A stretch of DNA of 64,000 bases from the IMG/VR virus record IMGVR_UViG_3300042934_000594, positions 205,431 through 269,430 of that record, one strand, 5' to 3'. The notes beneath the pieces are model-generated. The model ran no database searches. It was not told where the DNA came from and was given only the letters and a program-made list of their open reading frames with translations. Positions 37,348-63,688 of the stretch are shown in pieces (within the stretch, counting starts at the first letter, position 1; each line of letters starts with the position of its first letter). Both the position numbers and the translations under genes were made by a program.

Positions 37348-37758
37348 ATGAGTCTTGTAGACATACAGGTTGAGGGACATCAAGTGAGTCTCGAGGAAGA
37401 GACGATCAGGGAGATCATAGAGGCTAAGGGACCTAACGGTGAGTGGGACATCTACCACCTGGACAAGGTCATCCTTCAATACCAGAACGCTCAGACCGAG
37501 ACTGAGCGTGAACAGTTCCTGTATGAGATCAAAACCCGCACCGACAATGTCATCCGTACCCAATCAGGCTCTCCTACCGGCAGCATCGAAAGTGCTGTGC
37601 ATTCAGCCGTGGAGCAAGTGCTTCGAGTGATTGACGGCAATGGGGACGACCGACCGGGGTATAACCTGATTCCACGCGAATACGTCGGTCAACCCGAGCC
37701 CCAGTACGACATCGCCGGGGCATTGAGCGATGCCTACTTCACGATGATCAACACCTAA
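37348..37758 (+). CDS. INT-module family protein 1
   Basis: Ends VLRVIDG..PGYNLIP..DIAGALSDAYFTMINT; AAGGGG before ATG37348. Confidence 0.75.
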   Translation: MSLVDIQVEGHQVSLEEETIREIIEAKGPNGEWDIYHLDKVILQYQNAQTETEREQFLYEIKTRTDNVIRTQSGSPTGSIESAVHSAVEQVLRVIDGNGDDRPGYNLIPREYVGQPEPQYDIAGALSDAYFTMINT

Positions 37759-37767
37759 GGAGTTGTT

Positions 37768-38013
37768 ATGGCAGTAGCGCCCGATGTCACCCAACTGGTA
37801 GCGGCGTTAGACCCCGATCATCGCAGTAAGCTTGAGGCGTTTCTGACCGATTCCCGCTCAGGCTACTTAAAGCGGTTGGCCAGTGGTATGGATCACAAAC
37901 AACTCAGTAGCCGTAAACTGTGGCGCGACTTGAATGATCGTGCCCAAGCGATGGTTACTGAGAACCTTCTCATGCTCCAACAACAGTGGTTAAAAGGCTA
38001 TGGTTATCTCTGA
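37768..38013 (+). CDS. hypothetical protein
   Basis: AAGGAG RBS. Confidence 0.65.
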   Translation: MAVAPDVTQLVAALDPDHRSKLEAFLTDSRSGYLKRLASGMDHKQLSSRKLWRDLNDRAQAMVTENLLMLQQQWLKGYGYL

Positions 38014-38710
38014 CAAGGCTGCGGTGGTGTCCGACGCCAAGCAACTGCATACCCTCATGCACCAACAGCATGAGTACTACATGTCGGCGCCGGACAGTGA
38101 AACGTTTGAGTCGGTTGATGAGTTCATCGCCAACTGGAAAGACTACGACATCGACCTCAATCACATCGTACGCTGGGACTTTAGCGTTCAGGACAGTGAG
38201 TACCCGGAAGAGACCAGAGACTACGGCCCTAAAGGCTGTACCTACGCCAACATCGTGTGGGTGATGCCTCGCAAGGGGTATTTGTTTGGCAACATCATCA
38301 AGGACGTCAAGGTCCACGAGACGCCGCGCTTGCTGGCGTTCCTACAGAAGCACTGGGGCTACATGCAGAAACAGTGGGCGCCGGTGCCTGACGTGATCTA
38401 CGACCCGGTCACCAGTGCACGCGGCGTGTTCCTGGACGCCGTCACCCGCATCACGGACTTTCAAACCACGCCAGTGTTTGACACCGACAAAGAGGTGACC
38501 TACACCGCCCAATCGGTGGACGAGCTGATTCACGCACGGGTCCATCAGACCGCGGTAGATATCTTGTCGCTGGTCGATACGGGCGTGGCGGGTGTCAACG
38601 AGGGCTACCACCTGATTCCGGTGGGGGACCTCAAAGCTGACGACCTCAACCACGTCAATGACCTCGCTGGGGAATTGGCAACCTGCTATTTCGACATGAT
38701 CAATACCTAG
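38000..38710 (+). CDS. INT-module family protein 2
   Basis: N-terminal DIDLNHIVRWD..PRKG domain; ends DLAGELATCYFDMINT. Confidence 0.8.
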   Translation: MVISDKAAVVSDAKQLHTLMHQQHEYYMSAPDSETFESVDEFIANWKDYDIDLNHIVRWDFSVQDSEYPEETRDYGPKGCTYANIVWVMPRKGYLFGNIIKDVKVHETPRLLAFLQKHWGYMQKQWAPVPDVIYDPVTSARGVFLDAVTRITDFQTTPVFDTDKEVTYTAQSVDELIHARVHQTAVDILSLVDTGVAGVNEGYHLIPVGDLKADDLNHVNDLAGELATCYFDMINT

Positions 38711-38719
38711 GGGGTTACC

Positions 38720-39046
38720 GTGGGCGATCTACTGCAAGTCCAAGCACGGGGGCAAACTCACACCATCAACTCCGTCGAAATCGGGTCACCGGAACTTGAC
38801 ACCGGGGGCTATAAAAACTACATCTGGAGTTACAACAGCAAGCACGGGCAGGGTGACGGCACTATCCGAGCCGTGTTTCTGGTATCGCCGGACAAAGAAG
38901 CCGCGGACAAGCTTCTGGTCCACACCCTGGAGAAACGCACCGCCAAGCACTGCATTGCCGGCTATGAAGGAGGCACCTGGTACGCCCGTAAAGAAGGTCC
39001 TTCCTTCTACGACGACGAGCCGGTCCTCAACGTCTGCTGGACGTAA
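38720..39046 (+). CDS. hypothetical protein
   Basis: AGGGGG RBS with GTG start. Confidence 0.65.
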   Translation: MGDLLQVQARGQTHTINSVEIGSPELDTGGYKNYIWSYNSKHGQGDGTIRAVFLVSPDKEAADKLLVHTLEKRTAKHCIAGYEGGTWYARKEGPSFYDDEPVLNVCWT

Positions 39047-39051
39047 GGGCC

Positions 39052-39486
39052 ATGGACCCTCGCCTGGTAATGGCCATCGCGGTGGACGACAGTGACCTGG
39101 ACCACGAGGAAGCCAAGTTCCACTTTCGGGTCTACGGTGGGACCTGCTACCCCCATCGGGATACCTTAGCGGGTATCCCGCCCTGGGAAGTCAGCAGCAC
39201 GGGTGAGGTAAAAGCGCATCCAGGTGGGCATTACCTGTTGCGCACGATCTGTCACGTGGTACAGAAGGTCCTGGATGAACACCCTCGCCAGTTCACCAAG
39301 GAGCAAGCACTGCTCTTTACCCATCAAGTCACGGCGCCCTTGTATTTCGAACAGAACCACCCGGACCTGGCGAACTACATCGCTACCATGGCCCTGCGTA
39401 TTTGTTTACTGCTGCCCACTAAGGTATGGCGTATTCAACTACTGACCGTCCGTAAACGCATGCTGTACGTGCTACTTAACGACTAG
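39052..39486 (+). CDS. hypothetical protein
   Basis: AAGGG RBS; operon context. Confidence 0.65.
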   Translation: MDPRLVMAIAVDDSDLDHEEAKFHFRVYGGTCYPHRDTLAGIPPWEVSSTGEVKAHPGGHYLLRTICHVVQKVLDEHPRQFTKEQALLFTHQVTAPLYFEQNHPDLANYIATMALRICLLLPTKVWRIQLLTVRKRMLYVLLND

Positions 39487-39494
39487 GAACTGCA

Positions 39495-39821
39495 ATGACC
39501 AATTCTCGCACCCTCCACGACATCCTTCCAGCGGACCTCATCAAGGTCAACGCACTGCTGCAAGGCGTTAACCAGGAAGAGCTGGTGGAAAAAGCCCAGG
39601 CGGTTACCAAGCGCCTGACGCGCAAGTTCAGCAAGGACACTGCCGTGGCCCCCGCTGAGATCGTCCAGACTACTGTAGTCGCCATGCTCAAGGTTCTGGA
39701 CGGCACCGGCGGCCACCCGGGTTACATCGTCCTGGATCGGGAAAACCGTTTGAACGAGCCGCAGGCTAACGATTTGAGCGGTAAGTTGGTCGAGACGTAC
39801 TTTGACTTGATTAACGATTAA
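39495..39821 (+). CDS. INT-module family protein 3
   Basis: Ends MLKVLDG..PGYIV..DLSGKLVETYFDLIND. Confidence 0.75.
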   Translation: MTNSRTLHDILPADLIKVNALLQGVNQEELVEKAQAVTKRLTRKFSKDTAVAPAEIVQTTVVAMLKVLDGTGGHPGYIVLDRENRLNEPQANDLSGKLVETYFDLIND

Positions 39822-39830
39822 TCATGTTAT

Positions 39831-39984
39831 GTACAGGTGTATTGTAGTTGACACCTAGGAGGTGATCCAGCCTGCTGTTGTTACCCCGGGGTTATTTGCA
39901 CTCGCTGTGAAGCGACTTCGTAGCCCCAACGACTGCCTGTACGACCCCCGTCACCCCCTCCCCTTACCGGGAGGGGTTTTATTT
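39831..39984 (+). ncRNA. candidate sRNA with a 16-nt complement to the 16S rRNA 3' end
   Basis: TATG start; closing stem 39831-38/39935-42; AGGAGGTGATCCAGCC at 39857-72; terminator at 39955-84. Confidence 0.6.
39955..39984 (+). terminator. intrinsic terminator
   Basis: CCCCTCCC-CTTACC-GGGAGGGG followed by TTTTATTT. Confidence 0.8.
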
Positions 39985-40006
39985 CGTTTACCCCACTGAG
40001 GTTTTT

Positions 40007-40651
40007 ATGGAAGACAATTTCTGCATACAGCACGTGCCCGACTCTGAATGGCAAGCGAACCGTCAATGGTTGTTGACCACCCCCGAAGGAAAAACCATGC
40101 GGGTGAATGTAGGGCCTGAACGGCGCCCTACTGACGTGCGTGTGCATGCCAACCCGATCGTGCCCGACGGTAACGTTCACCATGGCATCCCGGCCATGCT
40201 CACCAGCAGCGGCAGTATGTTGGAACTGCGCCATCCCGAGCATCCTGAATTCAGCCACGGTGTAGCGGGCATGAACATCTGGTTCAAGTACGACGCCCTG
40301 GTGAAGGCCACGGAGCAGGGCATATTTAACCTGATGCCCATGATCCCCTTCACGCATCGCATGATGATGTTGGACGGACTGACTTGGCGACAAGCTGAGC
40401 ACTTTACCGACGAGACCAGCTATGACCCCGTTGCGGTCTGTGCGTTTCTGTTCATCCCGTACAAATCCTGCGAAGGGCAATTGCATTTCCCCAAAGCGTT
40501 GCAAAGCGACAAATCACGCGCCCTTACTGTGACGATCGATGAGGAGCTGCGCCAGATCATCGACGACGAACGGGTGCAGATGTACCCCATCAACCCCGAT
40601 CAACTCAAGCACATGACGGTCAACGTGGATCAAGCGGTGAGGGTTCTCTGA
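40007..40651 (+). CDS. hypothetical protein
   Basis: GAGGT RBS, 214 aa. Confidence 0.75.
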   Translation: MEDNFCIQHVPDSEWQANRQWLLTTPEGKTMRVNVGPERRPTDVRVHANPIVPDGNVHHGIPAMLTSSGSMLELRHPEHPEFSHGVAGMNIWFKYDALVKATEQGIFNLMPMIPFTHRMMMLDGLTWRQAEHFTDETSYDPVAVCAFLFIPYKSCEGQLHFPKALQSDKSRALTVTIDEELRQIIDDERVQMYPINPDQLKHMTVNVDQAVRVL

Positions 40652-40959
40652 TGGCTGACGCTGAAAAGAAACCTTGGGTGTGTCCCGAGGACGGTCAGTG
40701 GACCCAGGATGACGTTGCCGAACAACACATCGAGGACCTGGAACAAATCCGTACCGGGGCCATGCTTCAAATCGCTCGGATCGCTGCCGGCGAGAGCCTG
40801 AACAGTGAGTCGGCGCTGGCCATTGTCACCGACGCCATGTGTAAAGTGGTAGAAGTCTACGACAACCACCAGGTCATGGTGTACACCGGGGAACCAGACC
40901 GCACCACCATGATGCCACTTGGGATGACCCAGCGGTATTACGACCGGATCAACACGTAA
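40651..40959 (+). CDS. hypothetical protein ending YYDRINT (divergent INT-family member)
   Basis: TGATG coupling; UUCG hairpin at 40967-40984. Confidence 0.7.
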   Translation: MADAEKKPWVCPEDGQWTQDDVAEQHIEDLEQIRTGAMLQIARIAAGESLNSESALAIVTDAMCKVVEVYDNHQVMVYTGEPDRTTMMPLGMTQRYYDRINT

Positions 40960-41020
40960 CAATAGTCCCTCCCTTCGGGGAGGGGTTATGCCCGAAATCT
41001 TACGCACCAGAGGTATCACT

Positions 41021-41473
41021 ATGTCCCTACCAGGCAGCATTATCCGCATCAACCTGCACGATACGGATAAGCAGACTGAATGCTTCCACCCAGGCTGCCA
41101 GGCAGCCGGTACGTATCGCTTCACCGCAGAGTCGGACTCAGCAGGGGACGAATTTGAGTACTACTGCGATGTGCATATCCAACCCATTCAACAGTCGCTC
41201 CAGCAAGCAGATCGCTCGGGCTTTTGTGAGTGGTGCAAACGTCATGTGACGCTACTGAGTCCACGGCGGGATTTTGAAGAAGGGGCCCATGGACAGGTGT
41301 ATCAAGTATGCCAAGGGTGCATCCACAAACAAAACAGTGCCATCGACGCTGAGAATGCCCAACTGCGTGAAGACGAAGGCGCCTTCGAACCGTTTGACGA
41401 TTCAGAAGACGACTTGATCCTGGATCCAGATGAGTTTGACGATGACGACGATGGTGAACCCCCGATCATCTAG
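41021..41473 (+). CDS. Zn-binding protein with acidic tail
   Basis: CxxxxC, CxxH, CEWC, CQGC; D/E-rich C-terminus. Confidence 0.7.
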   Translation: MSLPGSIIRINLHDTDKQTECFHPGCQAAGTYRFTAESDSAGDEFEYYCDVHIQPIQQSLQQADRSGFCEWCKRHVTLLSPRRDFEEGAHGQVYQVCQGCIHKQNSAIDAENAQLREDEGAFEPFDDSEDDLILDPDEFDDDDDGEPPII

Positions 41474-41482
41474 GAGTCACCC

Positions 41483-41857
41483 ATGCACATCACCCAATCG
41501 ATCATTGCAGCCATCGCCTTGGAACGGCAGCTGCAATTGACCGGGCTGGAACTCAAAGCCACCATGCAAACCGGTGAGCCTGCTTTCCTGTGGCATTCGG
41601 TGGATGGCTTGAACTACAAGTGCTATCGCTTGTCGCTTGAGCCCACGGACACCAATCTGTACCTGGCGCTCAAGGCGCAACCTGGCCTGGGAGCGCAACA
41701 GCGCCCGATCATTGCCAACCACTGGCTGTACTGCGAGTGTGCAGGCGTGATCCAACAATCGCACTTCACGTTGAAGGACGATGACGTGGTCTACCTGGAC
41801 GACGAACAACACTTTACCATGCGACTGTCGGTTGTGGCAGTCATCACACCCAACTGA
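41483..41857 (+). CDS. hypothetical protein
   Basis: AGGAG RBS. Confidence 0.7.
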   Translation: MHITQSIIAAIALERQLQLTGLELKATMQTGEPAFLWHSVDGLNYKCYRLSLEPTDTNLYLALKAQPGLGAQQRPIIANHWLYCECAGVIQQSHFTLKDDDVVYLDDEQHFTMRLSVVAVITPN

Positions 41858-41866
41858 GGAGTAACC

Positions 41867-42514
41867 ATGAAGCTGTATATCGCAGGTGTTGGTAGTCGTG
41901 ACACACCGGCGGACATATTGCTATTGATGATCCGAATGGGGCGTACCCTGACGGACCAGGGGTATTCCCTGAGCAGTGGGGATGCGATTGGGGCAGACCG
42001 GGCGTTCTATTACGGAGCGAGCCTGTCGCCCCGATTCGCAGAAGTGGGTTGTCGGATCTACCTACACAAAGACAATTTCCAGGGTCGCTTTAATGACCCT
42101 GTGAATGGTTTTCTGGTGGCCCCACAGTTTACGGAAACCTGGGAAAAGGCTAAGGAACTCGCCTCGCTTGCCCGAGGCGGGTTTTATAACCTCACCCCTG
42201 GGGGCATCGCACTGCACACCCGCAATGTGTTCCAGATTTACGGGCACACCCTCAAAGCCAAAGTCAAGGCCGTGTACTACTGGGCCAAGCCTAAAGGCAA
42301 GAGTGAGAAGGTTGAGGGCGGCACCAACACCGCCTTGCAGATCGCTATTCGTGGGAACATCCCGCAGCGCATCAACCTGTACTACCCCGAAATGCAAGAG
42401 CGGGCTCTGGCTTTCTTGGCCAAGTTCGAATCCAAAGAACCTTACCCTGAGAACATGCTGGAAGCCAATCCCTGGATTGTTGACGAGCGTGCTCCATTGC
42501 CAAAGGCGGCCTAA
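41867..42514 (+). CDS. SLOG / DprA-like nucleotide-binding protein
   Basis: AGVGSR, LSSGDAIGAD, GGTNTA. Confidence 0.75.
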   Translation: MKLYIAGVGSRDTPADILLLMIRMGRTLTDQGYSLSSGDAIGADRAFYYGASLSPRFAEVGCRIYLHKDNFQGRFNDPVNGFLVAPQFTETWEKAKELASLARGGFYNLTPGGIALHTRNVFQIYGHTLKAKVKAVYYWAKPKGKSEKVEGGTNTALQIAIRGNIPQRINLYYPEMQERALAFLAKFESKEPYPENMLEANPWIVDERAPLPKAA

Positions 42515-42928
42515 GTGAACACCACACAAACCCTGAACTACCCGGCATACAACTGGATCGTGGCCAACAGCCTGGAAGAGGCGCAGCGCATCGCCAATGC
42601 GCTTAAGCTGGTGTACACGGTCCCTGTAGAGGAAATCCTCCCAGAGAGCGTTGAGGCCACTGAGGAGGCACGCATGGCGGCCGTGCGTGAGTGGTCAGAA
42701 GCCAACAAAGCGGTACCGACGATTGTCTCGGTGACCGACATGTCTACGTTCACCCGTGAGACCCTGGGGGAACTGAGCAAGGCCATGTTTGGTCTGCACA
42801 CCACGTTCCTCGTCACGATCGGTGCGATCCAAACGGCAGGCAACCCTGAGGAGTTCTTCCTCTTGCGTAACCGCAAACATGGCAGTGGTCCGTACAACGT
42901 CAACGACCCCAATATCCCCATCGGCTAG
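42515..42928 (+). CDS. hypothetical protein
   Basis: Abuts the previous stop. Confidence 0.6.
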   Translation: MNTTQTLNYPAYNWIVANSLEEAQRIANALKLVYTVPVEEILPESVEATEEARMAAVREWSEANKAVPTIVSVTDMSTFTRETLGELSKAMFGLHTTFLVTIGAIQTAGNPEEFFLLRNRKHGSGPYNVNDPNIPIG

Positions 42929-42940
42929 GAGCGTCACGCC

Positions 42941-43312
42941 ATGAAAACCCTCACAGCCTACTGGCAGGGTCTTAAGCGCTGGTACCGCGATCACAAACAT
43001 CAGGCGTACATCACCCAAGCAGAAAAGACCACCATCAAGGAAATGAAAGTGATCTGCGCTTACTTCGAGATCCCTCTGGCCCGCACGCACACCTGGGAAA
43101 TCTACCAGTGGCCTTACAAACCCCTGGTGCGTGAGCCTGACGGGTGGGAAGAACTGGAGGCCATTATCCGGGTCAAGGAGTCACCTGCCCGTCGGACCAG
43201 GCTGTATCAATTCATGGTTAAGTTCCATGACATCACCCCGGTCATGCACCGTCGGTTGCGGTGCAGTGAGCATTACCACGATTTCATGGACTGGTTTAAC
43301 GAAGAGCGATAA
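42941..43312 (+). CDS. hypothetical protein
   Basis: AGGAG RBS. Confidence 0.65.
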   Translation: MKTLTAYWQGLKRWYRDHKHQAYITQAEKTTIKEMKVICAYFEIPLARTHTWEIYQWPYKPLVREPDGWEELEAIIRVKESPARRTRLYQFMVKFHDITPVMHRRLRCSEHYHDFMDWFNEER

Positions 43313-43377
43313 CGGTTAAATAAAAAACCTACAGGCTCAATGGTAGGAGCCAATTACTTTTCCCTTGGGGTGTTGTT

Positions 43378-44133: not shown

Positions 44134-44149
44134 CACAGGAGCGTTATCC

Positions 44150-44449: not shown

Positions 44450-44463
44450 CCACCGGAGCCTCC

Positions 44464-54350: not shown

Positions 54351-55604
54351 ATGCGCGCTTATCAAGACCTGGTCCGTCACGTCCGGGACAATGGCAATAA
54401 TCACCCCAACGATCGCACTGGTGTGGGCACTCGTAACGTGGTCGGTGCTCTGATGCGCTGGTGGCTGCCCGACGGTTTCCCCGCGGTCACCGTCAAGCAC
54501 ACCGCCACCGGGAATGTGAAGAGCGAGCAGCTGTGGCTGCTGTCGGGTAACACTGACCTGAAGTTCTTGTTGGACAACAACAACCACATCTGGGACGAGT
54601 GGGTCCTACCTGGCACCGAAGTTTGGGGTGAGACGCCGTACACCCTGGAAGAGCGTTGGAAGATTTTCCTGCGTGGTTGGGAACGCGAGCAATACGACGG
54701 CAAGCAGCTACACGCGCTGGGCCTGTCTTATGACGTCGCGCTGCCTGAGTCGAACAAGCAGAAACAAATTGTCCTCGATGCGCTCAACATCTACACCCAC
54801 CCGCTGCTTGACGGCAAATTGGGTAAGGTATACGGCCAGCAGCAACGCGCCTGGGACGACACCCGTACCGTTACCCGTGACGCTTACTACCACGGCAAAT
54901 ATAGCAGCAGGGGCTACAAGGTCATCGGCGAGTACCACGCGAAAACCGATGATGAAAGCAACCCGCGGGTTGACATGGTGGTGATTCAACGCAAGGTCGA
55001 TCAGTTGAAGAACGCGATCGACACCCTCAAGACCAATCCTGACTCACGCCGGATCATCGTGATGTCCTGGAACCCGGGTGAGTTGGAAGACATGGCATTG
55101 CCGCCGTGCCATATGGACTATCAGTTCACCACCACCATCCTGACGTTGCACGAACGCATGGAGCTGTTCAACGCACTGTTAGCCAAGGCTCACCTCAAGG
55201 CTGTACTGCCGGCCATGCCTGAGCCGGACTTCAATGAAGAGCTCGTGCACGCGATCATGGACCGTTACGAGGTGCCCAAGCGTCGTCTGAACTGCATCTT
55301 CCACATGCGTTCGATCGACGTGGGTCTGGGGCTGCCGTTTAACATCGCCTCCTACGCGATGCTGACTCACATGGTCGCGCAGTGCGTGAACATGGAAGTT
55401 GGTGAGTTGGTCTGGCTGGGCGGTGACGTCCACATCTACGACAACCACCAGAAGTTGTACAAGATCCTGGAACGCGATCCGCTACCTCTGTGTCAGATCA
55501 AACTGAACCCAGAGGTCAAAAAGATCGATGACTTCAAGATGAGCGACATCGAAATCCTCAACTACAAGTCGCACCCCAAGATCACCCTTCCGGTGGCCGT
55601 ATGA
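54351..55604 (+). CDS. thyA: thymidylate synthase with insertions
   Basis: DRTGVGT, IWDEW, LGKVYGQQQR, DSRR, ALPPCH, RSIDVGLGLPFNIASY, DVHIYDNH. Confidence 0.96.
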   Translation: MRAYQDLVRHVRDNGNNHPNDRTGVGTRNVVGALMRWWLPDGFPAVTVKHTATGNVKSEQLWLLSGNTDLKFLLDNNNHIWDEWVLPGTEVWGETPYTLEERWKIFLRGWEREQYDGKQLHALGLSYDVALPESNKQKQIVLDALNIYTHPLLDGKLGKVYGQQQRAWDDTRTVTRDAYYHGKYSSRGYKVIGEYHAKTDDESNPRVDMVVIQRKVDQLKNAIDTLKTNPDSRRIIVMSWNPGELEDMALPPCHMDYQFTTTILTLHERMELFNALLAKAHLKAVLPAMPEPDFNEELVHAIMDRYEVPKRRLNCIFHMRSIDVGLGLPFNIASYAMLTHMVAQCVNMEVGELVWLGGDVHIYDNHQKLYKILERDPLPLCQIKLNPEVKKIDDFKMSDIEILNYKSHPKITLPVAV

Positions 55605-55846: not shown

Positions 55847-55847
55847 G

Positions 55848-56741: not shown

Positions 56742-56800
56742 CCGCATAACGCCCTCCCGCGGTGGGAGGGCTTATGTCCTTTTACCCCATGGAGTTTCTT

Positions 56801-57097: not shown

Positions 57098-57162
57098 ACA
57101 TAAGGGGCCTCTTCGCCGGAAGAGGTCCCTGCAATACCCCTTACCTATTTAGGAGCTGTACT

Positions 57163-57672
57163 GTGACAACATTTGAAACCCGAGACCTGCCTGAAGATGA
57201 CGCTGGTGCCAAGGCTGCTGACCTTATGCGCAAACGCAGTCTTGCCAGCAAAGCGCTCAAGGCCTTCAAGATCACCGTGTGGGTGTTTATCGCTGTGGGC
57301 CTGCTCGCTATCGCAGGTTTCCTTTATTACGCCTACACCACGCACGTAGGCGGTTACGTGACCGATGAACGCGCTTGCTCGATCGACATCGGTAAGAAGA
57401 ACATTGCAGGCACCCGTTCATACGGCTACCACTACGACGAGTACCTGGGCTTTCGTTTTATCGACACCCGCACCATCAGTGAACAGACCAAGATGCAAGT
57501 CCGCGGGGCCGGGTACACGGTAGTGAACCTCTATACCGACAATACCTTTGACACCACCCGCGTCGGGCAAGGCGAGCAAGGCATTCAGGTCCTCAAAGCT
57601 GCGGAGCGCTACGTCTTTATTTTCGAAGACGGCTCCATTGGTATGTCCGACTACAAGAAACTGTGTAAATAG
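57163..57672 (+). CDS. single-pass membrane protein with beta-rich ectodomain
   Basis: TM ITVWVFIAVGLLAIAGFLYYAY; two Cys. Confidence 0.7.
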   Translation: MTTFETRDLPEDDAGAKAADLMRKRSLASKALKAFKITVWVFIAVGLLAIAGFLYYAYTTHVGGYVTDERACSIDIGKKNIAGTRSYGYHYDEYLGFRFIDTRTISEQTKMQVRGAGYTVVNLYTDNTFDTTRVGQGEQGIQVLKAAERYVFIFEDGSIGMSDYKKLCK

Positions 57673-57682
57673 GAGTCTTTCA

Positions 57683-57892
57683 ATGACTGATAAACACGCA
57701 GGTTACCTGATTGTTCTCGATCAGGACATTCGTGAAGATGACGCTGAGGCGATCATCAACGCGATCAAAATGATCAAACACGTTTCCACCGTGACCCCCG
57801 TGGTGGCGAATCCGACGATGTACATTGCCCAGAATCGCGCTGACGACGTCTGGCGTGAGCGTCTGCTTACGCTGTTGCAGGAGCCTAAGTAA
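57683..57892 (+). CDS. hypothetical phage protein
   Basis: AGGAG before ATG57683. Confidence 0.7.
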   Translation: MTDKHAGYLIVLDQDIREDDAEAIINAIKMIKHVSTVTPVVANPTMYIAQNRADDVWRERLLTLLQEPK

Positions 57893-58545
57893 TGGGAAGT
57901 AGTGCCTATCCGGTGGTAGGGCGCTTGCGTCGTGACCACCCGTTCCCGTTCACGGGCGACCTGATGGCCATGATGGCTTCCGGGCTGTACCGCCCTCAAG
58001 ACTTTGAGTTCCTCGACCCGGATAAAGACGAGCCTTTGATCAATGGTAACTTCGCGGTTCATCTTCACTCCAACTACCCACTGTTCAGTTGGTTGGCAGA
58101 CATTCGTGGAACCACTGCACCGATCGAAGGGTACCTTCAAAACAAGGTGGACAGCGAAGCGTTTTGCGATTGGTTGAGTAAAGGTTTTCCGAAGTACCTG
58201 GACGGTACATGGAACCCGATCGACCCGAAGGAAGACTTCAATGAGCGCTACGTCGTCGGATGGCGGGGTCCGCACATTCGCACCATCGACTGGTTGCTGA
58301 ACTTTAACTACGACACCGTGGCGCATCTACAGCATGGGTTTGACGACGACGAGGTGGTGTTCAACGAGACCACCTGTTGTTTCGAGTACGTAGGTCCCGG
58401 CGTGCCTCACCCCGAAGGGCGTACGTACCGAGATATATTCACGTTTGCCGAAGGTTCCGTAAATTGTCCGGTTGATGAGTACTTCCAGTACTTGAAAGCT
58501 GCCAAGGCCGAAGATTGGGATTTCATCATCTTTCTGTTTGATTAG
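57892..58545 (+). CDS. hypothetical protein
   Basis: TAATG coupling; NYPLFSWLADIRG. Confidence 0.75.
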   Translation: MGSSAYPVVGRLRRDHPFPFTGDLMAMMASGLYRPQDFEFLDPDKDEPLINGNFAVHLHSNYPLFSWLADIRGTTAPIEGYLQNKVDSEAFCDWLSKGFPKYLDGTWNPIDPKEDFNERYVVGWRGPHIRTIDWLLNFNYDTVAHLQHGFDDDEVVFNETTCCFEYVGPGVPHPEGRTYRDIFTFAEGSVNCPVDEYFQYLKAAKAEDWDFIIFLFD

Positions 58546-58553
58546 GAGGCCCT

Positions 58554-58952
58554 ATGGCTCTCAGCGATAAAGATTACATCCACCGCTTGACCGCGGTGGA
58601 CCCAGGGTTGACAACGTGTCACGTGGCGTCTGTCGATGTGGACAAAGACGGTAATGTGACTGCGGCGGCCGTATTCAAGGACGGGACCGAGACGACCTTC
58701 GGAATCCCTAAGGGACCACGGCCAGTGCGCAGCTTAAATGTTGACTACGATGGGGACGCCTGCCACGGTACGGGTCACCAACCCCGTGAAGACCTGGCGG
58801 TGGGTTGGATGGACACTAACCTGTACGCGACTCGACTATTGCTTACTTACGCAATGCTCGTTTCGCGTTATCACGAAGAAAACACCAAGCGTCGTCCGAG
58901 TCGGGACAAGTACCTGACCAAGCTCATGCGTTACCACAACCGCGCCAAATAA
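58554..58952 (+). CDS. hypothetical protein with NVDYDGD motif
   Basis: AGGAGG RBS; terminator at 58955-58996. Confidence 0.7.
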   Translation: MALSDKDYIHRLTAVDPGLTTCHVASVDVDKDGNVTAAAVFKDGTETTFGIPKGPRPVRSLNVDYDGDACHGTGHQPREDLAVGWMDTNLYATRLLLTYAMLVSRYHEENTKRRPSRDKYLTKLMRYHNRAK

Positions 58953-59079
58953 ACCAGCAGGGGCTTCGGCCCCTGCTGTATGCCCTTTTCTTTTTTGTGT
59001 TGGAGGCATTACTGGATGTCTTATCTATTGTAGGGTAGCACCCTATTCCGATGTACCACCCTTCACTCGGAGCTTCACA

Positions 59080-60177
59080 ATGCGGTTTGCACAGTTGAAC
59101 GAGTTCAATCACACGGACTCGACGAACCACCTCACGTCCAACAAGGACTTGCCGGCACTGAACAACCAGTACTTTCAGCAGTGGCCTGATCGTCTGCGTT
59201 TCAACAGTCCGACATCAGGTGAGAACCTGGACAGCACTTCCGATGCTACCCCGTACGGGCGCTCGGAGCTGCGTGAGTGGGACATCAAGAAAAACCGTAA
59301 GGCTGGCTTCTTAATGAACCAGTTCGCGCAGAGCTTCTTTGCTGCGCGCCAAGCCATTGTCGACGTAGGCCCTGCGGGTAAGTCGATCTCCATGCAGATC
59401 CACGGTGCTGGTGATCATCCTGTTGGCAAGTTGCAATGGAAGCTGGCTAAGGACAAGAAGTCCGTTGACCTGAACTTCCAGTATCGGGTCAAGTGCAACA
59501 CCAAGGAAGACCAGGACATCATCTTGGTCAAAGGCGTTCCGTTCAACGTCGCGTTCGACCTGGCCATTTCGTATGGCGAAGGTTGGATGGCTGTCGACTA
59601 CAACTGGAACACTGACAAGCCAGTCAGTAAAGTCATCACCCTGGACAAGAAAAGCTACGCCAAAGACCCGCAGTACTTTAAGTCAGGTGTGTATTGTCAG
59701 ACCCAGGTGGTCGACAAGAACAAGCAGCTTAAGGGTCAAGGTGTGGTTGACATCTTTGCCTTCGCGATGCATCACGGGGAGAAAATCGAATTGCCAGACT
59801 TCGATAAGCAAGCAGAGTTCAAGGCTGGTGAAGACACCACCAACCAGAAAAACCCAGCACCCGTCCCTACACCCGGCACGCCTGAAAAGCCTGCTGAGTC
59901 GCAGAACCCCGGTCAGAACCCGGTGGATTACCCTGAGGTGGACATCCCGAAAGTCCCCGCAGCCACCAACGCTGACCAATTGCTCGCAGGCGTTCCTGCT
60001 GGCAAAGTAGAAGCAGTCAAAGTGCTGATCGGTCAGATCAACACCGCCGCCAATGCGGGCCAACCGGCGCTTGCCAAAGAAGCGCTGACCAAGTTGGAAG
60101 ATATCGCCGATCATTTCGATGAAGACGAGATCGTCAACTTGCGTACCTGGCTCAAGTCCATGCGCGACGCGATGTAA
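59080..60177 (+). CDS. polysaccharide lyase family 7 (alginate lyase) with Pro-rich linker and helical C-terminal domain
   Basis: All three PL7 signatures: RSELRE, QIH, YFKSGVYCQ. Confidence 0.88.
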   Translation: MRFAQLNEFNHTDSTNHLTSNKDLPALNNQYFQQWPDRLRFNSPTSGENLDSTSDATPYGRSELREWDIKKNRKAGFLMNQFAQSFFAARQAIVDVGPAGKSISMQIHGAGDHPVGKLQWKLAKDKKSVDLNFQYRVKCNTKEDQDIILVKGVPFNVAFDLAISYGEGWMAVDYNWNTDKPVSKVITLDKKSYAKDPQYFKSGVYCQTQVVDKNKQLKGQGVVDIFAFAMHHGEKIELPDFDKQAEFKAGEDTTNQKNPAPVPTPGTPEKPAESQNPGQNPVDYPEVDIPKVPAATNADQLLAGVPAGKVEAVKVLIGQINTAANAGQPALAKEALTKLEDIADHFDEDEIVNLRTWLKSMRDAM

Positions 60178-60182
60178 TAAGG

Positions 60183-60206
60183 GCAGTCCCTTCGGGGACT
60201 GCTTTA
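60183..60206 (+). terminator. intrinsic terminator
   Basis: GCAGTCCC-TTCG-GGGACTGC followed by TTTA. Confidence 0.8.
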
Positions 60207-60217
60207 TATCGTCTCTA

Positions 60218-60245
60218 ACTGCACCGATTTTGAAAACTACATAAT
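60218..60245 (+). promoter_or_regulatory. early promoter candidate
   Basis: ACTGCACC-gat-TTTGAAAACTACATAAT. Confidence 0.5.
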
Positions 60246-60272
60246 GTCGTTAGTAACCCTGAGGACTAACAC

Positions 60273-60707
60273 ATGCGTGAACCGATCACCGAAGTCATCC
60301 AATCCCTGACCCAACAGTACCTTGATAAAACCCCAGGCCTTACGCTTGAAGGTATCAACCGAGGTGAATGTGAAACCTTCGCCCAAGCGGTTATCGCTCG
60401 GGTGTATGGGGGCAACATGTTTGGTGTGGAGGAATTCCAACAGCCCGACGGGAAATTCGATTGGCATCACCTTGAGGCGGAATGGGGCATTAGCCCGCCC
60501 GGCGGCTTTACCCACGAACAGGTTGATGCGGCTGATCTGGGTGGCCATCTGTGGATCGTCCAGAGAACCGTGACGTTTGGCGGCGTTACTACAAACCGCC
60601 ATTATGACTGCGAGTGCCCTGAGGGGGTGGACAGTTTCTTTGACCTCCCTTTCTTCAAACGACAACTCACCAAACGAGTACCTGACCATGGCCTTCACAC
60701 TTCCTGA
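60273..60707 (+). CDS. putative papain/transglutaminase-fold protein
   Basis: INRGECETFA, GHLWI, HYD in Cys-His-Asp order. Confidence 0.5.
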   Translation: MREPITEVIQSLTQQYLDKTPGLTLEGINRGECETFAQAVIARVYGGNMFGVEEFQQPDGKFDWHHLEAEWGISPPGGFTHEQVDAADLGGHLWIVQRTVTFGGVTTNRHYDCECPEGVDSFFDLPFFKRQLTKRVPDHGLHTS

Positions 60708-61347
60708 GTTCTTTCAGCGCCTACAATCAATGCAGGATCAGCACGATCAACATTATCACGCTGACGTCTATACTTTGTCACGCGCCGATAACCTGCGTCA
60801 CATGACCCTGCACATGGGTAAGTACCTGGGTAAGCTGGCCCAATTCGAACGCGATGGTAAGGCACTCGATCCAGCCGTTGAGGGTGTGCTGGTGGACTGG
60901 TTGATCATCTGCATGTCATCAGCCTGCCGCTTGAACTTCAACCTGGGTGTGGCCCTGCATGAGAAAACCCTGACAGGCGATCTGTGGGAACGCCATCACG
61001 GCAGCTATCCTAATCCCGAAACTGCGGATGAGGCCATCCGTCAGATCGCCAACGAGCAGATCCTGGGTAAGGGCAGCCGCCTGTCGATCGTCCACCTGGC
61101 AATCCCCGTTGGGCGCATGGCCAAGGCACTGGAAGCACTGGACCACCTGGAGGATTTTGATTCCAGGGGTGTTCTGGAAGCCAGCGTTAAAGAAGTCTTC
61201 ATGCAAGTACTGGCGCTCTGGGCTCACTACAGCCCGCACGCGAAGTTCAGCGCCTGCATGCGCGCCCGTTTGGAGCACGTGGAGTCCCGTAACTTCATGT
61301 ACCGCTTCAAACCCAAGTACCGCGAAAACTTCAAGGCCCCGCTGTAA
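60688..61347 (+). CDS. MazG-like all-alpha protein (two degenerate helical units)
   Basis: LRHMTLHMGKYLGKLA..DWLIICMSSACRLNFNL; second unit IVHLAIPVGRMAKALEALDH. Confidence 0.5.
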   Translation: MAFTLPEFFQRLQSMQDQHDQHYHADVYTLSRADNLRHMTLHMGKYLGKLAQFERDGKALDPAVEGVLVDWLIICMSSACRLNFNLGVALHEKTLTGDLWERHHGSYPNPETADEAIRQIANEQILGKGSRLSIVHLAIPVGRMAKALEALDHLEDFDSRGVLEASVKEVFMQVLALWAHYSPHAKFSACMRARLEHVESRNFMYRFKPKYRENFKAPL

Positions 61348-61904
61348 TGAAATTCCAGGCCGCGATGGATGCGTGCCCACCAGGCTTCTTCGTCAAAGAT
61401 GAACGTGAGGGTTGGAACGAGTACGCCGTGCAGTTTGGTCGTGGTGCCGATGGCGTACCGTTCTGGACGGCGGGCGGTACGGTGGGTGGGGATCTCACTC
61501 CAGAACGTACACCCACCGATGAGGCGGTGTACCACATCTACGACCGAATGGGCAGCAAAAGTCCGCTGAGCCTTAACGAGGTCAAGCGTCTGTACGAAGG
61601 ACGTCAACGCCGACTTAAGGTCGAGCAGGAAGTGTGGGTCAACGACCGTAACGACTTCCTGGGTAAAGTCAATCGGGTCATCCACCGCCAGCTGGAAACC
61701 CCGATTGCGGAAGGGACCTTGCTGTACGACGCCCTCCCCAGCCAGCTTAACACCTTGGCAGTTGAGATCCTCAAGATCATCGATGGCAAACAACACCCTA
61801 AAGATCCCGGCTACACCCTGATCGCCAAGAGTGTTGGTCCGATAGGCCACCACAGCGATATCAGCGGTGAATTGGCGGTCCTCTTCAATGGCATTAATAC
61901 TTAA
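61347..61904 (+). CDS. INT-module family protein 4
   Basis: Ends ILKIIDG..PGYTLIA..DISGELAVLFNGINT. Confidence 0.8.
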   Translation: MKFQAAMDACPPGFFVKDEREGWNEYAVQFGRGADGVPFWTAGGTVGGDLTPERTPTDEAVYHIYDRMGSKSPLSLNEVKRLYEGRQRRLKVEQEVWVNDRNDFLGKVNRVIHRQLETPIAEGTLLYDALPSQLNTLAVEILKIIDGKQHPKDPGYTLIAKSVGPIGHHSDISGELAVLFNGINT

Positions 61905-61915
61905 AGGAGTCGTCC

Positions 61916-62587
61916 ATGTATCAAACCCCGAGCGCAGGCCAGCTGGCTGAAATCAAATTGCTAGTCCCAGGTATCGCTGACCTGATCAACGAAGCGCAAC
62001 TGGCTACGCTGGCCACCAATCTCACCCGTGAAGACGACGCAGGCACTACCCTGCGTCAGGTCCTGGAAGTGATGGTCAAGGCGCAGGCTGTCACTGAAGA
62101 GCACCTGGTAGATTTGGTGCGGTATGTCAACTTCCAGCGCTTAGGCCCTATGCTTAAGCAGCAGGAACAACTGGCCATCGCAACCCAAGGATTTGCGTTG
62201 CAGGGTGTGTTCTCCACCAAAGAAGGGGAAACAGATCGGGCCTACACCATCGGCCTCAGCATCCGCACAGGCTTTGAAGTGTTTGCCATGGCCGGTAATG
62301 ACGTGAACCTACTGCAAGCCATGGTAGCGTCCTACGCAAAACTAGCGCTGGATGGGCAGGACATTGAAGTGCCTCGCAACGATTTAGGTGGTATGAGGCA
62401 TCAGCCCAACTATGGCGTGCGCACGGTGGCCGTTCCGGTAACTGACCCTGAAGCGATCCAACGGTACTTGCCAGGTCAGCCTCATCCGGTGACCAAGGTG
62501 TACCAGATTCTGATTGCCGACAAAAACAACCTCCTGCCTAACGAGCAGGGCTACGATACGGACTGGGTCCAACCCCTGGTTGGGTAG
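61916..62587 (+). CDS. DUF4262-like protein
   Basis: AYTIGL..E; YQILIAD..LP.EQGYD..QP. Confidence 0.6.
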   Translation: MYQTPSAGQLAEIKLLVPGIADLINEAQLATLATNLTREDDAGTTLRQVLEVMVKAQAVTEEHLVDLVRYVNFQRLGPMLKQQEQLAIATQGFALQGVFSTKEGETDRAYTIGLSIRTGFEVFAMAGNDVNLLQAMVASYAKLALDGQDIEVPRNDLGGMRHQPNYGVRTVAVPVTDPEAIQRYLPGQPHPVTKVYQILIADKNNLLPNEQGYDTDWVQPLVG

Positions 62588-62596
62588 AGGTGGTAT

Positions 62597-63688
62597 ATGA
62601 ACGATACGCCAGCATGGGTTACTCTGGCTGTACGGGACGTCCTGAGTGATGTCACTGATCGCCGTGGCCTGCGACAAGCATTGGACCAGTGTGATCAGGA
62701 AACCCTGGACGCGATGGAAGGGCATTTCAAAAGCTTGGTAAGTTGCACGTCCACTTCGGCGCTGGCGGTGGATGCGATCCTGTGCTATCTGCGCAATGAG
62801 GACAACTCCTTTGCCCGTGAGTGGGATCAGGTCGATGCAGAAACACAGCACGACATACGCACCCAGTGGGAGACATTGATCCAGCGTCGTCGTGAGACGG
62901 ATTGGAAGAAAGTCACCCCCAGTCAGGACCGTAGTGAGCGCTCCTGGGAGCGTGAGGTTGCCGTCAAGCTCTGGGACGGCCTCTGGTTGAAAGCCGGCAC
63001 TCGAAAAATCGTCGGCGATGTCGCACTGAACGAACGTGAGCAGTTGTTGGACTTGATGGCGGATATGATTCGCCGCAACAAGAATACCACCGCAGCTGCC
63101 AACGGGGTGCTGTCCTTACTGCTGTTGGAGATGGCGGGTTTCCATGACATCTACTACGGGCTCACGTACACCGAGCGGATGGAGTTGCTGCGCGATTGGA
63201 ATCAGATGATCCTGGCTGCCATTCCCAAGACCGAGCCGGCACCCAAAGATAAAATCTTCAAGCAAGACACCGGCGCGTTCTACCAACTCCCCGTCCCGGA
63301 ACAGCAAGCCAACCTGTACGCTCATGCGCGTTACCCGCTGATCGATGCAGGCCTCACCGCTGAGCAACAAGCCTGGGAACTGCGCAGTGCATGGCTTAAG
63401 GGGTGTGAGTGGCAAAAGACCCAAACACCGTTGGACAACCTGGGGCCTAAAGACCGGCTGATGTATGACCTCAATGCCATCGTCGATATGTGGGACGACA
63501 ATGGCATCTCACGGGCTGACACCAAAGACATCATCGGTTCGGTACTCAGTTTGATTGACGGGGAGCCCTACGATGACGACCTGCCTTCAGGACCTGGGTA
63601 TTACCTGATTCCGAAGAGCGGTCCACTCAATGCCGAATTCGACCTTTCTGGAAGCCTGGCCTACCTCTGGGATGAGATTAATACCTAA
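62597..63688 (+). CDS. INT-module family protein 5 with four N-terminal helical repeats
   Basis: Ends VLSLIDG..PGYYLIP..DLSGSLAYLWDEINT. Confidence 0.8.
   Translation: MNDTPAWVTLAVRDVLSDVTDRRGLRQALDQCDQETLDAMEGHFKSLVSCTSTSALAVDAILCYLRNEDNSFAREWDQVDAETQHDIRTQWETLIQRRRETDWKKVTPSQDRSERSWEREVAVKLWDGLWLKAGTRKIVGDVALNEREQLLDLMADMIRRNKNTTAAANGVLSLLLLEMAGFHDIYYGLTYTERMELLRDWNQMILAAIPKTEPAPKDKIFKQDTGAFYQLPVPEQQANLYAHARYPLIDAGLTAEQQAWELRSAWLKGCEWQKTQTPLDNLGPKDRLMYDLNAIVDMWDDNGISRADTKDIIGSVLSLIDGEPYDDDLPSGPGYYLIPKSGPLNAEFDLSGSLAYLWDEINT

What the first reader, a model, noticed from the sequence alone, without database searches (positions are those of the whole stretch)
37348..63688. Dispersed family of unrelated proteins sharing a C-terminal module that ends in -INT
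Seen: five ORFs (37348, 38000, 39495, 61347, 62597; 108-363 aa) have unrelated N-termini but the same ~50-60 aa end: hLxhhD(G)-x(4-10)-(P)GYxLI-x(8-14)-D[IL][AS]GxL-x(2-3)-[YL][FW]xxIN[TD]-stop. The last codons vary synonymously (atc aac acc, atc aat acc, att aat act, att aat acc), so selection acts on the peptide. They sit in two clusters 22 kb apart, each behind an early-type promoter. Inference: a swappable-cargo system in which a common tail addresses diverse effectors to one receptor or assembly (phage nucleus or early vesicle import, capsid loading, hetero-oligomer, or a C-terminal degron). A related stand-alone domain may exist among phage hypothetical proteins.
Basis: partly seen in the sequence, partly recalled or inferred. 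Interest (0 to 1): 0.8.

Follow-up and report, generated by a model that had tools for sequence, protein, structure and literature searches.

The report
Jumbo-phage gp258-like end-domain gene family
Five, probably seven, genes of a soil jumbo phage end in the same acidic domain of about 90 residues; the family also includes phiKZ gp258, its function is unknown, recombination has reshuffled its front parts and end-domains, and nothing shows that the domain is an address label.

Summary
ORFs at 37348, 38000, 39495, 61347 and 62597 share a C-terminal module; each is recovered at E 1e-8 to 1e-12 by a profile built without it, and their N-termini are unrelated. The module is longer than reported: an 88-100 aa domain predicted to fold on its own, not a 50-60 aa tail.

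The window is the end of a 269-kb soil phiKZ-like phage contig, closest to Pseudomonas phage Noxifer. The domain is the uncharacterised phiKZ gp258 family (phrog_11061/18616). It has no Pfam, PDB or BFVD match. About 50 members are known, almost all from jumbo-phage-sized or unplaced metagenomic contigs. Noxifer has 8-10 copies, five in tandem.

29 of 53 members are the domain alone. 36 of 40 stop exactly one residue after [IV][NQ]. The median module pI is 4.2.

Heads and modules have reassorted: B's head is 62-64% identical to one gene lineage and its module 61-64% identical to another. Both window clusters follow a conserved AT-rich promoter-like motif. Published phiKZ data show gp257/258 transcripts by 2 min, low-molecular-weight sedimentation and tolerance of transposon insertions.

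Best reading: a diversifying early accessory binder family. The address-tag idea is unsupported but not excluded.

The parts
37124..37149 (+). Promoter-like motif (GATTGTAAAGGC + TTTAGAGTTTATAT) about 200 nt upstream of gene A, in the divergent region next to the SNF2 helicase gene
   Evidence: The motif class is enriched in the window. This copy has 2 mismatches. It is conserved at 47/48 nt at the same position in relative L008.
37348..37758 (+). Member A, 136 aa, ends MINT; module at about 37474-37755; short helical head of about 45 aa
   Evidence: The gene call in the public collection (P0002, 136 aa) agrees. phrog_18616 E 6e-6 and phrog_11061 E 2e-5.
38000..38710 (+). Member B, 236 aa, ends MINT; alpha/beta head 38000-38398 (phrog_7880) plus module about 38399-38707
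   Evidence: The head is 62-64% identical to P0030-33, while the module is 61-64% identical to P0007/P0034/P0006. AF2 model.
39495..39821 (+). Member C, 108 aa, ends LIND; essentially the module alone (about 39543-39818)
   Evidence: AF2 model pLDDT 79: helices, a short hairpin, a variable loop and a C-terminal helix.
39955..39976 (+). Terminator-like hairpin ending the A-B-C transcription unit
40651..40959 (+). ORF F, 102 aa, ends RINT; probable divergent member of the family
   Evidence: Not significant by HMM. hhalign of F plus its L008 orthologue against the 40-sequence family alignment gives probability 85%, E 5.8e-6 over 90 columns.
60217..60242 (+). Promoter-like motif (AACTGCACCGAT + TTTGAAAACTACAT) after a GC-rich hairpin (about 60183-60202), at the head of the operon that holds D and E
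   Evidence: It has 2 mismatches, so it is weak on its own. The hairpin was read from the sequence and was not called by the terminator scan.
61347..61904 (+). Member D, 185 aa, ends GINT; head 61347-61616, module about 61617-61901; its start overlaps the upstream stop (TAATG)
   Evidence: Orthologues are P0008 and NOXIFER_261. The head alone is 54% identical to a protein of Alcaligenes phage QDWS535.
62597..63688 (+). Member E, 363 aa, ends EINT; long head, module about 63428-63685
   Evidence: By eye, the start of the head resembles the N-termini of P0012/P0013 (not scored).
63893..63910 (+). Terminator-like hairpin after the small membrane ORF downstream of E; likely end of the D/E operon

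Best explanation
The five ORFs, plus a sixth just outside the window and probably ORF 40651, belong to one multigene family of phiKZ-like jumbo phages. The family is defined by an acidic domain of about 90 residues that is predicted to fold on its own: the domain of phiKZ gp258. These points are shown.

The predicted fold is long helices, a short GY.LIP hairpin, a loop of variable length, and a final helix D[IL][SA]G.L..[FY]F..[IV]N[TS] that ends the protein.

The genes lie in the accessory, plus-strand part of the genome at two conserved positions: after the SNF2 helicase and downstream of thymidylate synthase. Both positions follow a conserved AT-rich promoter-like motif. The phiKZ members are transcribed within 2 minutes of infection.

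The family grows by tandem duplication. Recombination reassorts different N-terminal heads onto different module lineages; where the crossovers lie was not mapped.

Inferred mechanism: the domain is a self-contained protein-binding scaffold, and in most members it is the working part rather than a tag. The paralogues have diverged at their surfaces, in the variable loop and in their heads, so that each binds a different host or phage partner early in infection, in host take-over or counter-defence. Added heads bring extra functions. No step of this binding model has been tested.
For: Family membership and extent:
- HMM and leave-one-out recovery in the window.
- A profile search of 1.84 billion representatives finds only 24 other proteins, 23 of them with the match at or within a few residues of the C-terminus; the 24th is probably spurious.
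- phiKZ gp258 scores E 5e-11 and gp257 E 4e-8 with a profile that excludes them.
- Noxifer census: 8 sure members, five of them in tandem. There are at least 5 in the 261-kb contig of L009 and 4 consecutive genes in L008.

The domain works on its own:
- 29 of 53 members are 140 aa or shorter.
- The AF2 model of the 108-aa member has pLDDT 79.

Structural rather than catalytic conservation:
- 12 of the 16 most conserved columns are hydrophobic or Gly; the others are Tyr77, D69, D93 and N107.
- The loop between Y and the last helix varies from 13 to 37 residues.

Deep divergence of paralogues: median terminal branch 1.05 changes per site, and the window paralogues do not group together.

Reassortment of heads and modules.

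Acidity: median module pI 4.2.

Promoter motif: with PMC7598289.

phiKZ gp257/258, from published data:
- Transcripts are present at 2 min and rise to 10 min, and the proteins sediment in light gradient fractions (PMC10914614 supplements).
- They tolerate many transposon insertions. They lie in the orf184-304 region, which that paper's authors suggest encodes host-interacting or defence-related functions (PMC12676376).
Against: - No partner, target or defence system has been identified, so the binding role is inference from context.
- The binder model does not explain why 36 of 40 members stop exactly one residue after [IV][NQ]. That hints at a function for the free C-terminus.
- Members D and C are only mildly acidic.
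- Transcript levels of phiKZ gp257/258 are 10-30 times below those of the strong early genes.
- The two promoter-like sites next to the window clusters each carry 2 mismatches, and at that stringency the motif is only about 2-fold enriched.
Confidence: 0.45

Rival explanations
1. Address tag. The common C-terminal module, and in particular its free [IV]-N-x-COOH end, docks diverse heads onto one receptor or assembly: the early infection vesicle, the nuclear shell or its import machinery, the procapsid, or a host protease. Module-only members would act as competitors or regulators.
For: - The position of the stop is fixed in 36 of 40 members across very deep divergence.
- The module is at the C-terminus in nearly every member found.
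- Unrelated heads carry it, and heads have been swapped.
- The heads of B and D occur without the module in unrelated phages.
Against: - More than half of the members carry no cargo.
- Paralogue modules are only 20-35% identical, and their conserved residues are mostly core-like.
- Published analyses of chimallivirus nuclear proteins found no terminal signal and point to surface patches (PMC11087766).
- phiKZ gp258 and gp257 sediment in light fractions, not with large assemblies.
- phiKZ gp257 carries the module internally, and gp258 ends VNRG.
Confidence: 0.15
2. Oligomerisation subunit. The module is a homo- or hetero-oligomerisation domain, and the several ancient paralogues kept in each genome assemble into one mixed complex that displays the different heads.
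For: - Several deeply diverged paralogue lineages are kept side by side in each genome.
- The genes are adjacent and sometimes overlap, which may favour joint translation.
- phiKZ gp258 (14 kDa) peaks at gradient fraction 3, with a tail to fraction 8, rather than at fraction 1.
Against: - Copy number varies widely, from 2-3 in the scanned part of phiKZ to 8-10 in Noxifer, which is unlike a fixed complex.
- No multimer prediction or experiment is available.
- phiKZ gp257 stays in fractions 1-2.
Confidence: 0.15
3. C-terminal degron or stability signal. The invariant end marks these early proteins for timed proteolysis, or protects them from it.
For: The end position is fixed, and expression is early.
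Against: - The end is polar (T/S/N/D/K), unlike the non-polar ssrA-type LAA end (from general knowledge).
- It is predicted to be the last turn of a packed helix with pLDDT 82-89, not a floppy tail.
- A degron does not need 90 conserved residues.
Confidence: 0.05
4. Degenerate or cryptic enzyme of the all-alpha MazG/HisE nucleotide pyrophosphohydrolase type.
For: One member (P0024) hits Pfam PRA-PH at 19.1 bits, E 0.0018, over the first module helix. Two phage phosphohydrolases appear far down the BFVD list.
Against: - The hit is below the Pfam cut-off of 21.3, in 1 of 28 members.
- The family has no conserved EExxE/D metal motif; the only conserved acidic columns are D69 and D93.
- Foldseek TM-scores are 0.25 or lower.
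Confidence: 0.03

Closest known systems
phiKZ gp258 (PHIKZ258; phrog_11061, VOG9824), phrog_18616 and phiKZ gp257
   Same: Same domain by profile. Same genome neighbourhood, downstream of thymidylate synthase on the plus strand. Small and acidic. Adjacent paralogues.
   Different: phiKZ gp258 has a 20-residue insertion in the variable loop and ends VNRG. In gp257 the module is internal. Only 2-3 copies were found in the scanned 50 kb of phiKZ, against at least 6 here and 8-10 in Noxifer. No function has been published for any of them, and no paper in the library discusses gp258 in its main text.
Terminal targeting peptides on diverse cargo (encapsulin cargo-loading peptides, microcompartment encapsulation peptides, the T4 capsid-targeting sequence); compared from general knowledge
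   Same: One conserved terminal element on otherwise unrelated proteins; the precise position at the protein end matters.
   Different: Those are short, unstructured peptides of about 10-20 residues with a known shell receptor. Here the element is a predicted folded domain of about 90 residues, most members have no cargo, and no receptor is known.
Polymorphic effector families with a constant delivery domain and recombining variable domains (Rhs/CDI/T6SS-type, T9SS C-terminal domains); compared from general knowledge
   Same: Modular architecture; tandem copies; recombination that recombines constant and variable parts.
   Different: There is no secretion apparatus, no toxin or immunity pairs and no known toxin domains. 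The constant part often stands alone.
Chimallivirus nuclear import (PicA/Imp pathway)
   Same: Same phage group.
   Different: Published cargo recognition depends on surface patches, and no N- or C-terminal signal was found (PMC11087766). No family member is among the nuclear proteins discussed in the sections read.

Membership tests
phiKZ gp258-like domain family (phrog_11061 / phrog_18616) | Significant profile match over the whole domain | tested here: met
   phrog_18616 hits A, B and C (E 6e-6 to 1.5e-3) and phrog_11061 hits A. D and E join through the family HMM. phiKZ gp258 scores E 5e-11 with a profile that does not contain it.
phiKZ gp258-like domain family (phrog_11061 / phrog_18616) | Conserved core pattern: F in helix 1; L...DG; GY.L; D[IL][SA]G.L; F..[IV]N | tested here: met
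   All five window members carry it. Column statistics.
phiKZ gp258-like domain family (phrog_11061 / phrog_18616) | Occurrence in phiKZ-like jumbo phages, in the accessory region near the SNF2 helicase and thymidylate synthase | tested here: met
   The window encodes split multisubunit RNA polymerase subunits and an SNF2 helicase 53% identical to Noxifer's. The positions match those in Noxifer, phiKZ, L008, L009 and L011.
Short terminal targeting peptide systems (encapsulin-like cargo tags) | The tag is a short, unstructured peptide of about 10-20 residues | tested here: not met
   The conserved unit is 88-104 profile positions and is predicted to be folded.
Short terminal targeting peptide systems (encapsulin-like cargo tags) | Every tag-bearing protein carries a cargo domain | tested here: not met
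   29 of 53 members are 140 aa or shorter, that is the module plus a short extension.
Short terminal targeting peptide systems (encapsulin-like cargo tags) | A cognate receptor or shell that binds the tag | not testable with these tools
   No multimer prediction or interaction data were available.
Chimallivirus nuclear-import cargo | Localisation inside the phage nucleus, dependent on PicA/Imp | not testable with these tools
   Needs microscopy. The literature reports no terminal signal (PMC11087766).
MazG/HisE all-alpha NTP pyrophosphohydrolases | Pfam match above the gathering score | tested here: not met
   Best hit PF01503 at 19.1 bits against a cut-off of 21.3, in 1 of 28 members.
MazG/HisE all-alpha NTP pyrophosphohydrolases | Conserved acidic metal-binding motif (EExxE/D) | tested here: not met
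   There is no such conserved motif. The conserved columns are mostly hydrophobic or Gly, plus D69, D93 and N107.
ssrA-type C-terminal degrons | Exposed, non-polar C-terminal residues | tested here: not met
   The ends are INT, INS, INN, IND, IQS or VNK and lie in a confidently predicted helix.

The most novel reading that the evidence does not exclude
The gp258-like module is a docking domain. Its invariant free C-terminus ([IV]-N-x-COOH) plugs into one phage- or host-encoded receptor, such as the early infection vesicle, the nuclear shell or import machinery, or a host protease adaptor. A jumbo phage could then send interchangeable heads to one place, and recombination between tandem modules would be the swapping mechanism. 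This would be the first modular addressing system described in a nucleus-forming phage.
Probability: 0.13. Interest if true: 0.8.

Novelty: new member of a known kind. Interest (0 to 1): 0.45.

Why it matters
Most genes of nucleus-forming jumbo phages have no known function, and their large accessory regions are thought to hold host take-over and counter-defence functions. This work turns scattered 'hypothetical proteins' into one defined family. The family has a profile, a predicted fold, a precise C-terminal signature, two conserved genome positions, a candidate promoter and clear evidence that heads and modules reassort.

The family is present in two cultured model systems: phiKZ on P. aeruginosa (gp257/258, perhaps gp211) and Noxifer on P. 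fluorescens SBW25 (8-10 copies). Transposon insertions in phiKZ orf257 and orf258 were recovered in a published pool, so such mutants are obtainable. Localisation, partners and host-specific phenotypes are therefore directly testable.

If the fixed C-terminus proves to be a docking signal, this would be a new sorting principle for phage compartments. If not, it is an ordinary but large diversifying family of accessory genes.

Tried and rejected
- Pfam, NCBIfam and PHROG scans of the five proteins, of fused relatives and of all 28 aligned members gave only sub-threshold or scattered hits. PADLOC was not run.
- A profile search of PDB sequences found only designed helical repeats and noise.
- Foldseek of the module model against PDB and BFVD found nothing at E<=0.001. 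The best hit was a 92-aa 201phi2-1 protein at E 0.67.
- Foldseek of the B model against PDB gave weak glyoxalase-like hits only, with TM 0.3 or lower.
- ESM Atlas searches with C and with the B head found no usable lead.
- Word-index homologue searches with C and with the 40-sequence alignment added almost nothing. The search with B found its orthologues.
- tblastn of P0017 and P0011 against phage genomes found no match.
- A first promoter guess, TATTGTAG...ACC, was not enriched (12 sites against 9 expected) and was dropped. Sigma-70-type scans were at chance level.
- The Avs5/JADA paper is unrelated; JADA is a 721-aa protein.
- The 'gp257' in the import and nucleus-interactome papers is the PhiPA3 DNA ligase, a coincidence of numbering.
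- No RNA run holds the phage. The laid DNA contigs show no variants in A, B or C, so microdiversity gives no test of selection.
- P0026 (2721 aa) matches only 24 profile positions in its best stretch, with four matched stretches in all, and is taken as spurious.

Full report
WHAT THE WINDOW IS. The window is the last 64 kb of a 269,430-bp JGI soil-metagenome contig. The same phage, at 99.97% identity, is assembled in other soil runs from three studies. The window encodes split multisubunit RNA polymerase subunits typical of phiKZ-like jumbo phages (5070-9464 and 9467-11125). It also encodes an SNF2 helicase (34961-37093, minus strand) that is 53% identical to that of Pseudomonas phage Noxifer and 45-50% identical to those of PhiPA3, 201phi2-1 and other phiKZ-like jumbo phages. 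Gene order follows Noxifer 174-235 kb and, more loosely, phiKZ 200-250 kb. No phage in GenBank is close at the DNA level. Noxifer encodes PhuZ, and it has a 625-aa (1,878-nt) ORF at the chimallin position just upstream of the non-virion RNA polymerase beta-prime gene. I did not test whether the window phage itself encodes chimallin, because that gene would lie outside the window.

CHECK OF THE OBSERVATION. The five ORFs are as described. A profile of their last 62 residues finds only these five among all six-frame ORFs of the window, at E about 1e-26; the next hit has E 3.9. When each member is left out of the profile in turn, it is still found at E 9e-12 to 8e-8, so the similarity is not circular. 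The parts upstream of the module give no BLASTP similarity to each other.

Aligning 28 and then 40 family members shows a further conserved helix, (E/D)R..F(L/V)..V, about 45 residues upstream of IL.VIDG, which gives a module of 88-104 profile positions.

There are also more members. A 102-aa gene ending EINS lies about 7 kb past the window end in the same phage. ORF 40651-40959 (ends RINT) is not significant by HMM, but together with its orthologue from a relative it matches the family profile over 90 columns at probability 85%, E 6e-6. I treat it as a probable divergent member.

WHAT THE MODULE IS. No Pfam or NCBIfam family matches. Two PHROG families of unknown function do match: phrog_18616 (A, B, C) and phrog_11061 (A). 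A published supplement assigns phiKZ gp258 to phrog_11061 and VOG9824. With a family HMM that did not contain them, phiKZ gp258 scores E 5e-11 and its neighbour gp257 scores E 4e-8; in gp257 the module is internal. gp211 is borderline at E 0.003-0.007.

A profile search of 1.84 billion representative proteins found only 24 further proteins at E<=1e-3. They are 86-506 aa long, except for a 2721-aa protein whose best matched stretch covers only 24 profile positions and which I take as spurious. The other 23 match at, or within a few residues of, the C-terminus.

AlphaFold2 on the 108-aa member C with the family alignment gives pLDDT 79 and pTM 0.64. The model has long helices, a short hairpin at GY.LIP, a loop, and a final helix that ends the protein. 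Foldseek finds no match at E<=0.001 in PDB or BFVD. The Atlas gives no lead.

Of the 16 most conserved columns, 12 are hydrophobic or glycine. The others are Tyr77, D69 (in IDG), D93 and the penultimate N/Q. This pattern suggests fold conservation rather than a catalytic site. The loop between the conserved Y and the last helix varies from 13 to 37 residues. The modules are strongly acidic: median pI 4.2, and net charge typically -8 to -15 over 88 residues, although D and C are milder. One member has a sub-threshold hit to the MazG/HisE-type family PRA-PH, but the acidic metal motif of that superfamily is not conserved, so I reject an enzymatic reading.

THE C-TERMINAL END. In 36 of 40 aligned members the protein stops exactly one residue after [IV][NQ]. 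The endings are INT 14, INS 6, INN 5, IQS 4, VNT 3, IND 2, VNK 1 and VNN 1. The exceptions include phiKZ gp258 (VNRG) and three members without the motif. NOXIFER_253, found in the later Noxifer census, ends INEDD. The T is not conserved in orthologues: B's orthologues end INN or IQS. The position of the end is conserved to a degree that no model here fully explains.

DISTRIBUTION AND COPY NUMBER.
- Wherever a long contig is available, it is jumbo-sized: 269, 261, 233 and 97 kb.
- Copies cluster. There are four consecutive genes right after the SNF2 helicase in L008, and three consecutive genes plus one more within 4.3 kb in L009. A fifth L009 member lies elsewhere on that 261-kb contig. L002 and L011 each have two adjacent copies.
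- I scanned the complete genome of the cultured phage Noxifer. It has 8 clear members: NOXIFER_236, 249-253 in tandem just downstream of thymidylate synthase, 261 and 297. Two more are borderline (234, 290). All are on the plus strand between 213 and 250 kb.
- The window's two clusters correspond to these two conserved positions: after the helicase, and 6-8 kb downstream of thymidylate synthase (54351-55604).
- Only a genome announcement exists for Noxifer. No paper in the searchable library discusses phiKZ gp258.

MODULE-ONLY MEMBERS AND HEADS. Of 53 members collected, 29 are 140 aa or shorter, that is the module plus a short and often acidic extension. Real extra domains occur in B, D and E and in a dozen relatives.
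- B's head is phrog_7880 (E 3e-31). It is modelled as an alpha/beta domain with pLDDT 78-90 and has no convincing structural match. It occurs without the module in KVP40-like Vibrio phages, Aeromonas phages and an Arthrobacter phage.
- D's head is 54% identical to a protein of a 50-kb Alcaligenes phage.
- The heads are therefore independent, mobile domains of unknown function.

REASSORTMENT.
- B's head (residues 1-135) is 62-64% identical to the heads of P0030-P0033. B's module is only 29-34% identical to theirs, but 61-64% identical to the modules of P0007, P0034 and P0006, which carry a different head. P0007 is the gene immediately downstream of P0030 in L008.
- In turn, the head of P0007 is 49% identical (E 3e-17) to that of P0024, while their modules belong to different, well-supported clades.
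- So the same head sits on different module lineages, and the same module lineage sits on different heads.
- The module tree is otherwise star-like, with a median terminal branch of 1.05 changes per site. The five window paralogues do not group together, so the paralogues are old (many long branches, so the deep nodes are not reliable).
- The likely mechanism is recombination or unequal crossing-over between adjacent copies. This is inferred, and the crossover points were not mapped.

EXPRESSION SIGNALS. The AT-rich motif TTTRARWYYTAWAT, usually preceded by ATTGCAAA, occurs 4 times with at most 1 mismatch, against 0.14 expected. With 2 mismatches there are 9 sites against 4 expected. These include 37136, about 200 nt upstream of A, and 60229, at the head of the operon containing D and E just after a GC-rich hairpin. 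The 37136 site with its flanks is conserved at 47 of 48 nt at the same place in L008, although the proteins of the two phages are only about 50-64% identical. Similar sites occur in Noxifer and downstream of the window. A review states that in every RNA-polymerase-encoding jumbo phage a conserved AT-rich motif of about 10 nt marks the early promoters (PMC7598289). This motif is therefore a good early-promoter candidate, but its timing is untested. Terminator-like hairpins close the A-C unit (39955-39976) and the D/E operon (63893-63910).

WHAT IS KNOWN FOR THE phiKZ MEMBERS. The following is reused from published supplements.
- gp257 and gp258 transcripts are absent before infection, present at 2 min (59 and 26 units) and rise to 10 min (587 and 250). 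That is 10-30 times below the strongest early genes, but above non-early genes.
- In glycerol gradients, gp258 peaks in fraction 3 and gp257 in fractions 1-2. Both are far from ribosomes and large assemblies.
- Both proteins are detected in size-exclusion proteomics, each as one peak.
- In phage transposon sequencing, orf257 and orf258 carry many insertions: 21 and 8 sites in one table, 36 and 28 in the other. The neighbouring orf260 has 2 and 6 sites.
- They lie in the orf184-304 region, which that paper's authors describe as largely non-essential and suggest encodes host-interacting or defence-related functions.

INTERPRETATION. Firmly established:
- This is a real domain family, catalogued but uncharacterised.
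- It has expanded in phiKZ-like jumbo phages.
- It sits at two conserved accessory positions.
- It has an unusually fixed C-terminal end.
- Heads and modules have reassorted.

My best functional reading, at moderate-to-low confidence, is that the module is itself the working unit. It would be a small acidic protein-binding scaffold made early in infection, whose paralogues have diverged to bind different host or phage partners in take-over or counter-defence, with heads added in some lineages.

- most members carry no cargo;
- no conserved surface is evident;
- the published evidence argues against terminal import signals;
- the phiKZ proteins sediment in light fractions;
- phiKZ gp257 carries the module internally.

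The fixed free C-terminus keeps the tag model alive at roughly 0.15. A hetero-oligomer scaffold is a comparable rival. A degron or an enzyme is unlikely.

LIMITS.
- Function is inferred from context only.
- Only one 50-kb stretch of phiKZ and the 64-kb window (plus 10 kb downstream) of the focal phage were scanned, so those copy numbers are lower bounds.
- The family's true range needs an iterated profile search.

Noticed in passing
window 40967-40990: A GC-rich hairpin (CCCTCCC-TTCG-GGGAGGG type, terminator-like) recurs at several other places in this phage's contigs from other runs. It may be a dispersed terminator or repeat element.
   Followed up: no
window 40153-40396 (inside ORF 40007-40651): In one soil run (X4) the strain differs at 10 positions within 250 nt, while the other 3.7 kb laid show no difference. 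Eight of the ten fall on third codon positions of the ORF. This is a local patch of divergence under purifying selection, possibly a recombination tract.
   Followed up: partly
window 61916-62587: The gene between members D and E carries a DUF4262 domain (Pfam E 1e-10), and its function is unknown. It is co-transcribed with D and E by position.
   Followed up: no
window 59080-60177: A 365-aa protein with an alginate-lyase-type domain (PF08787 in the precomputed annotation) lies just upstream of the D/E operon. It may be a depolymerase and hints at an alginate-producing host such as Pseudomonas.
   Followed up: no
window 63695-63883: A small ORF downstream of E encodes a protein with two hydrophobic stretches and a GYG-rich middle. 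A 50-aa DUF3309 gene sits near the family member in the distant jumbo-phage contig L011.
   Followed up: no
L008 9370-9417 versus window 37114-37161: A 48-nt stretch containing the promoter-like motif is conserved at 47/48 nt between two phages whose proteins are only about 50-64% identical. This is a strong footprint of a regulatory site between the SNF2 helicase gene and the family cluster.
   Followed up: partly
phiKZ NC_004629.1 218592-219011 (gp211): gp211 (139 aa, ends ELVNGK) is a borderline match to the family profile (E 0.003-0.007). It lies between the helicase gp203 and the dCTP deaminase gp214, the positional equivalent of the window's first cluster.
   Followed up: partly
P0031 (B orthologue, JGI contig of 19 kb): The source names this protein 'ribosomal protein S18'. 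It is a clear orthologue of B (47% identity, E 3e-65), so the name is most likely an annotation error.
   Followed up: no
window 38000-38398 and 61347-61616: The heads of B (phrog_7880) and D occur on their own in unrelated, non-jumbo or T4-like phages (KVP40-like Vibrio phages, Aeromonas phages, Arthrobacter phage Rizwana, Alcaligenes phage QDWS535). They are widely travelled domains of unknown function.
   Followed up: partly
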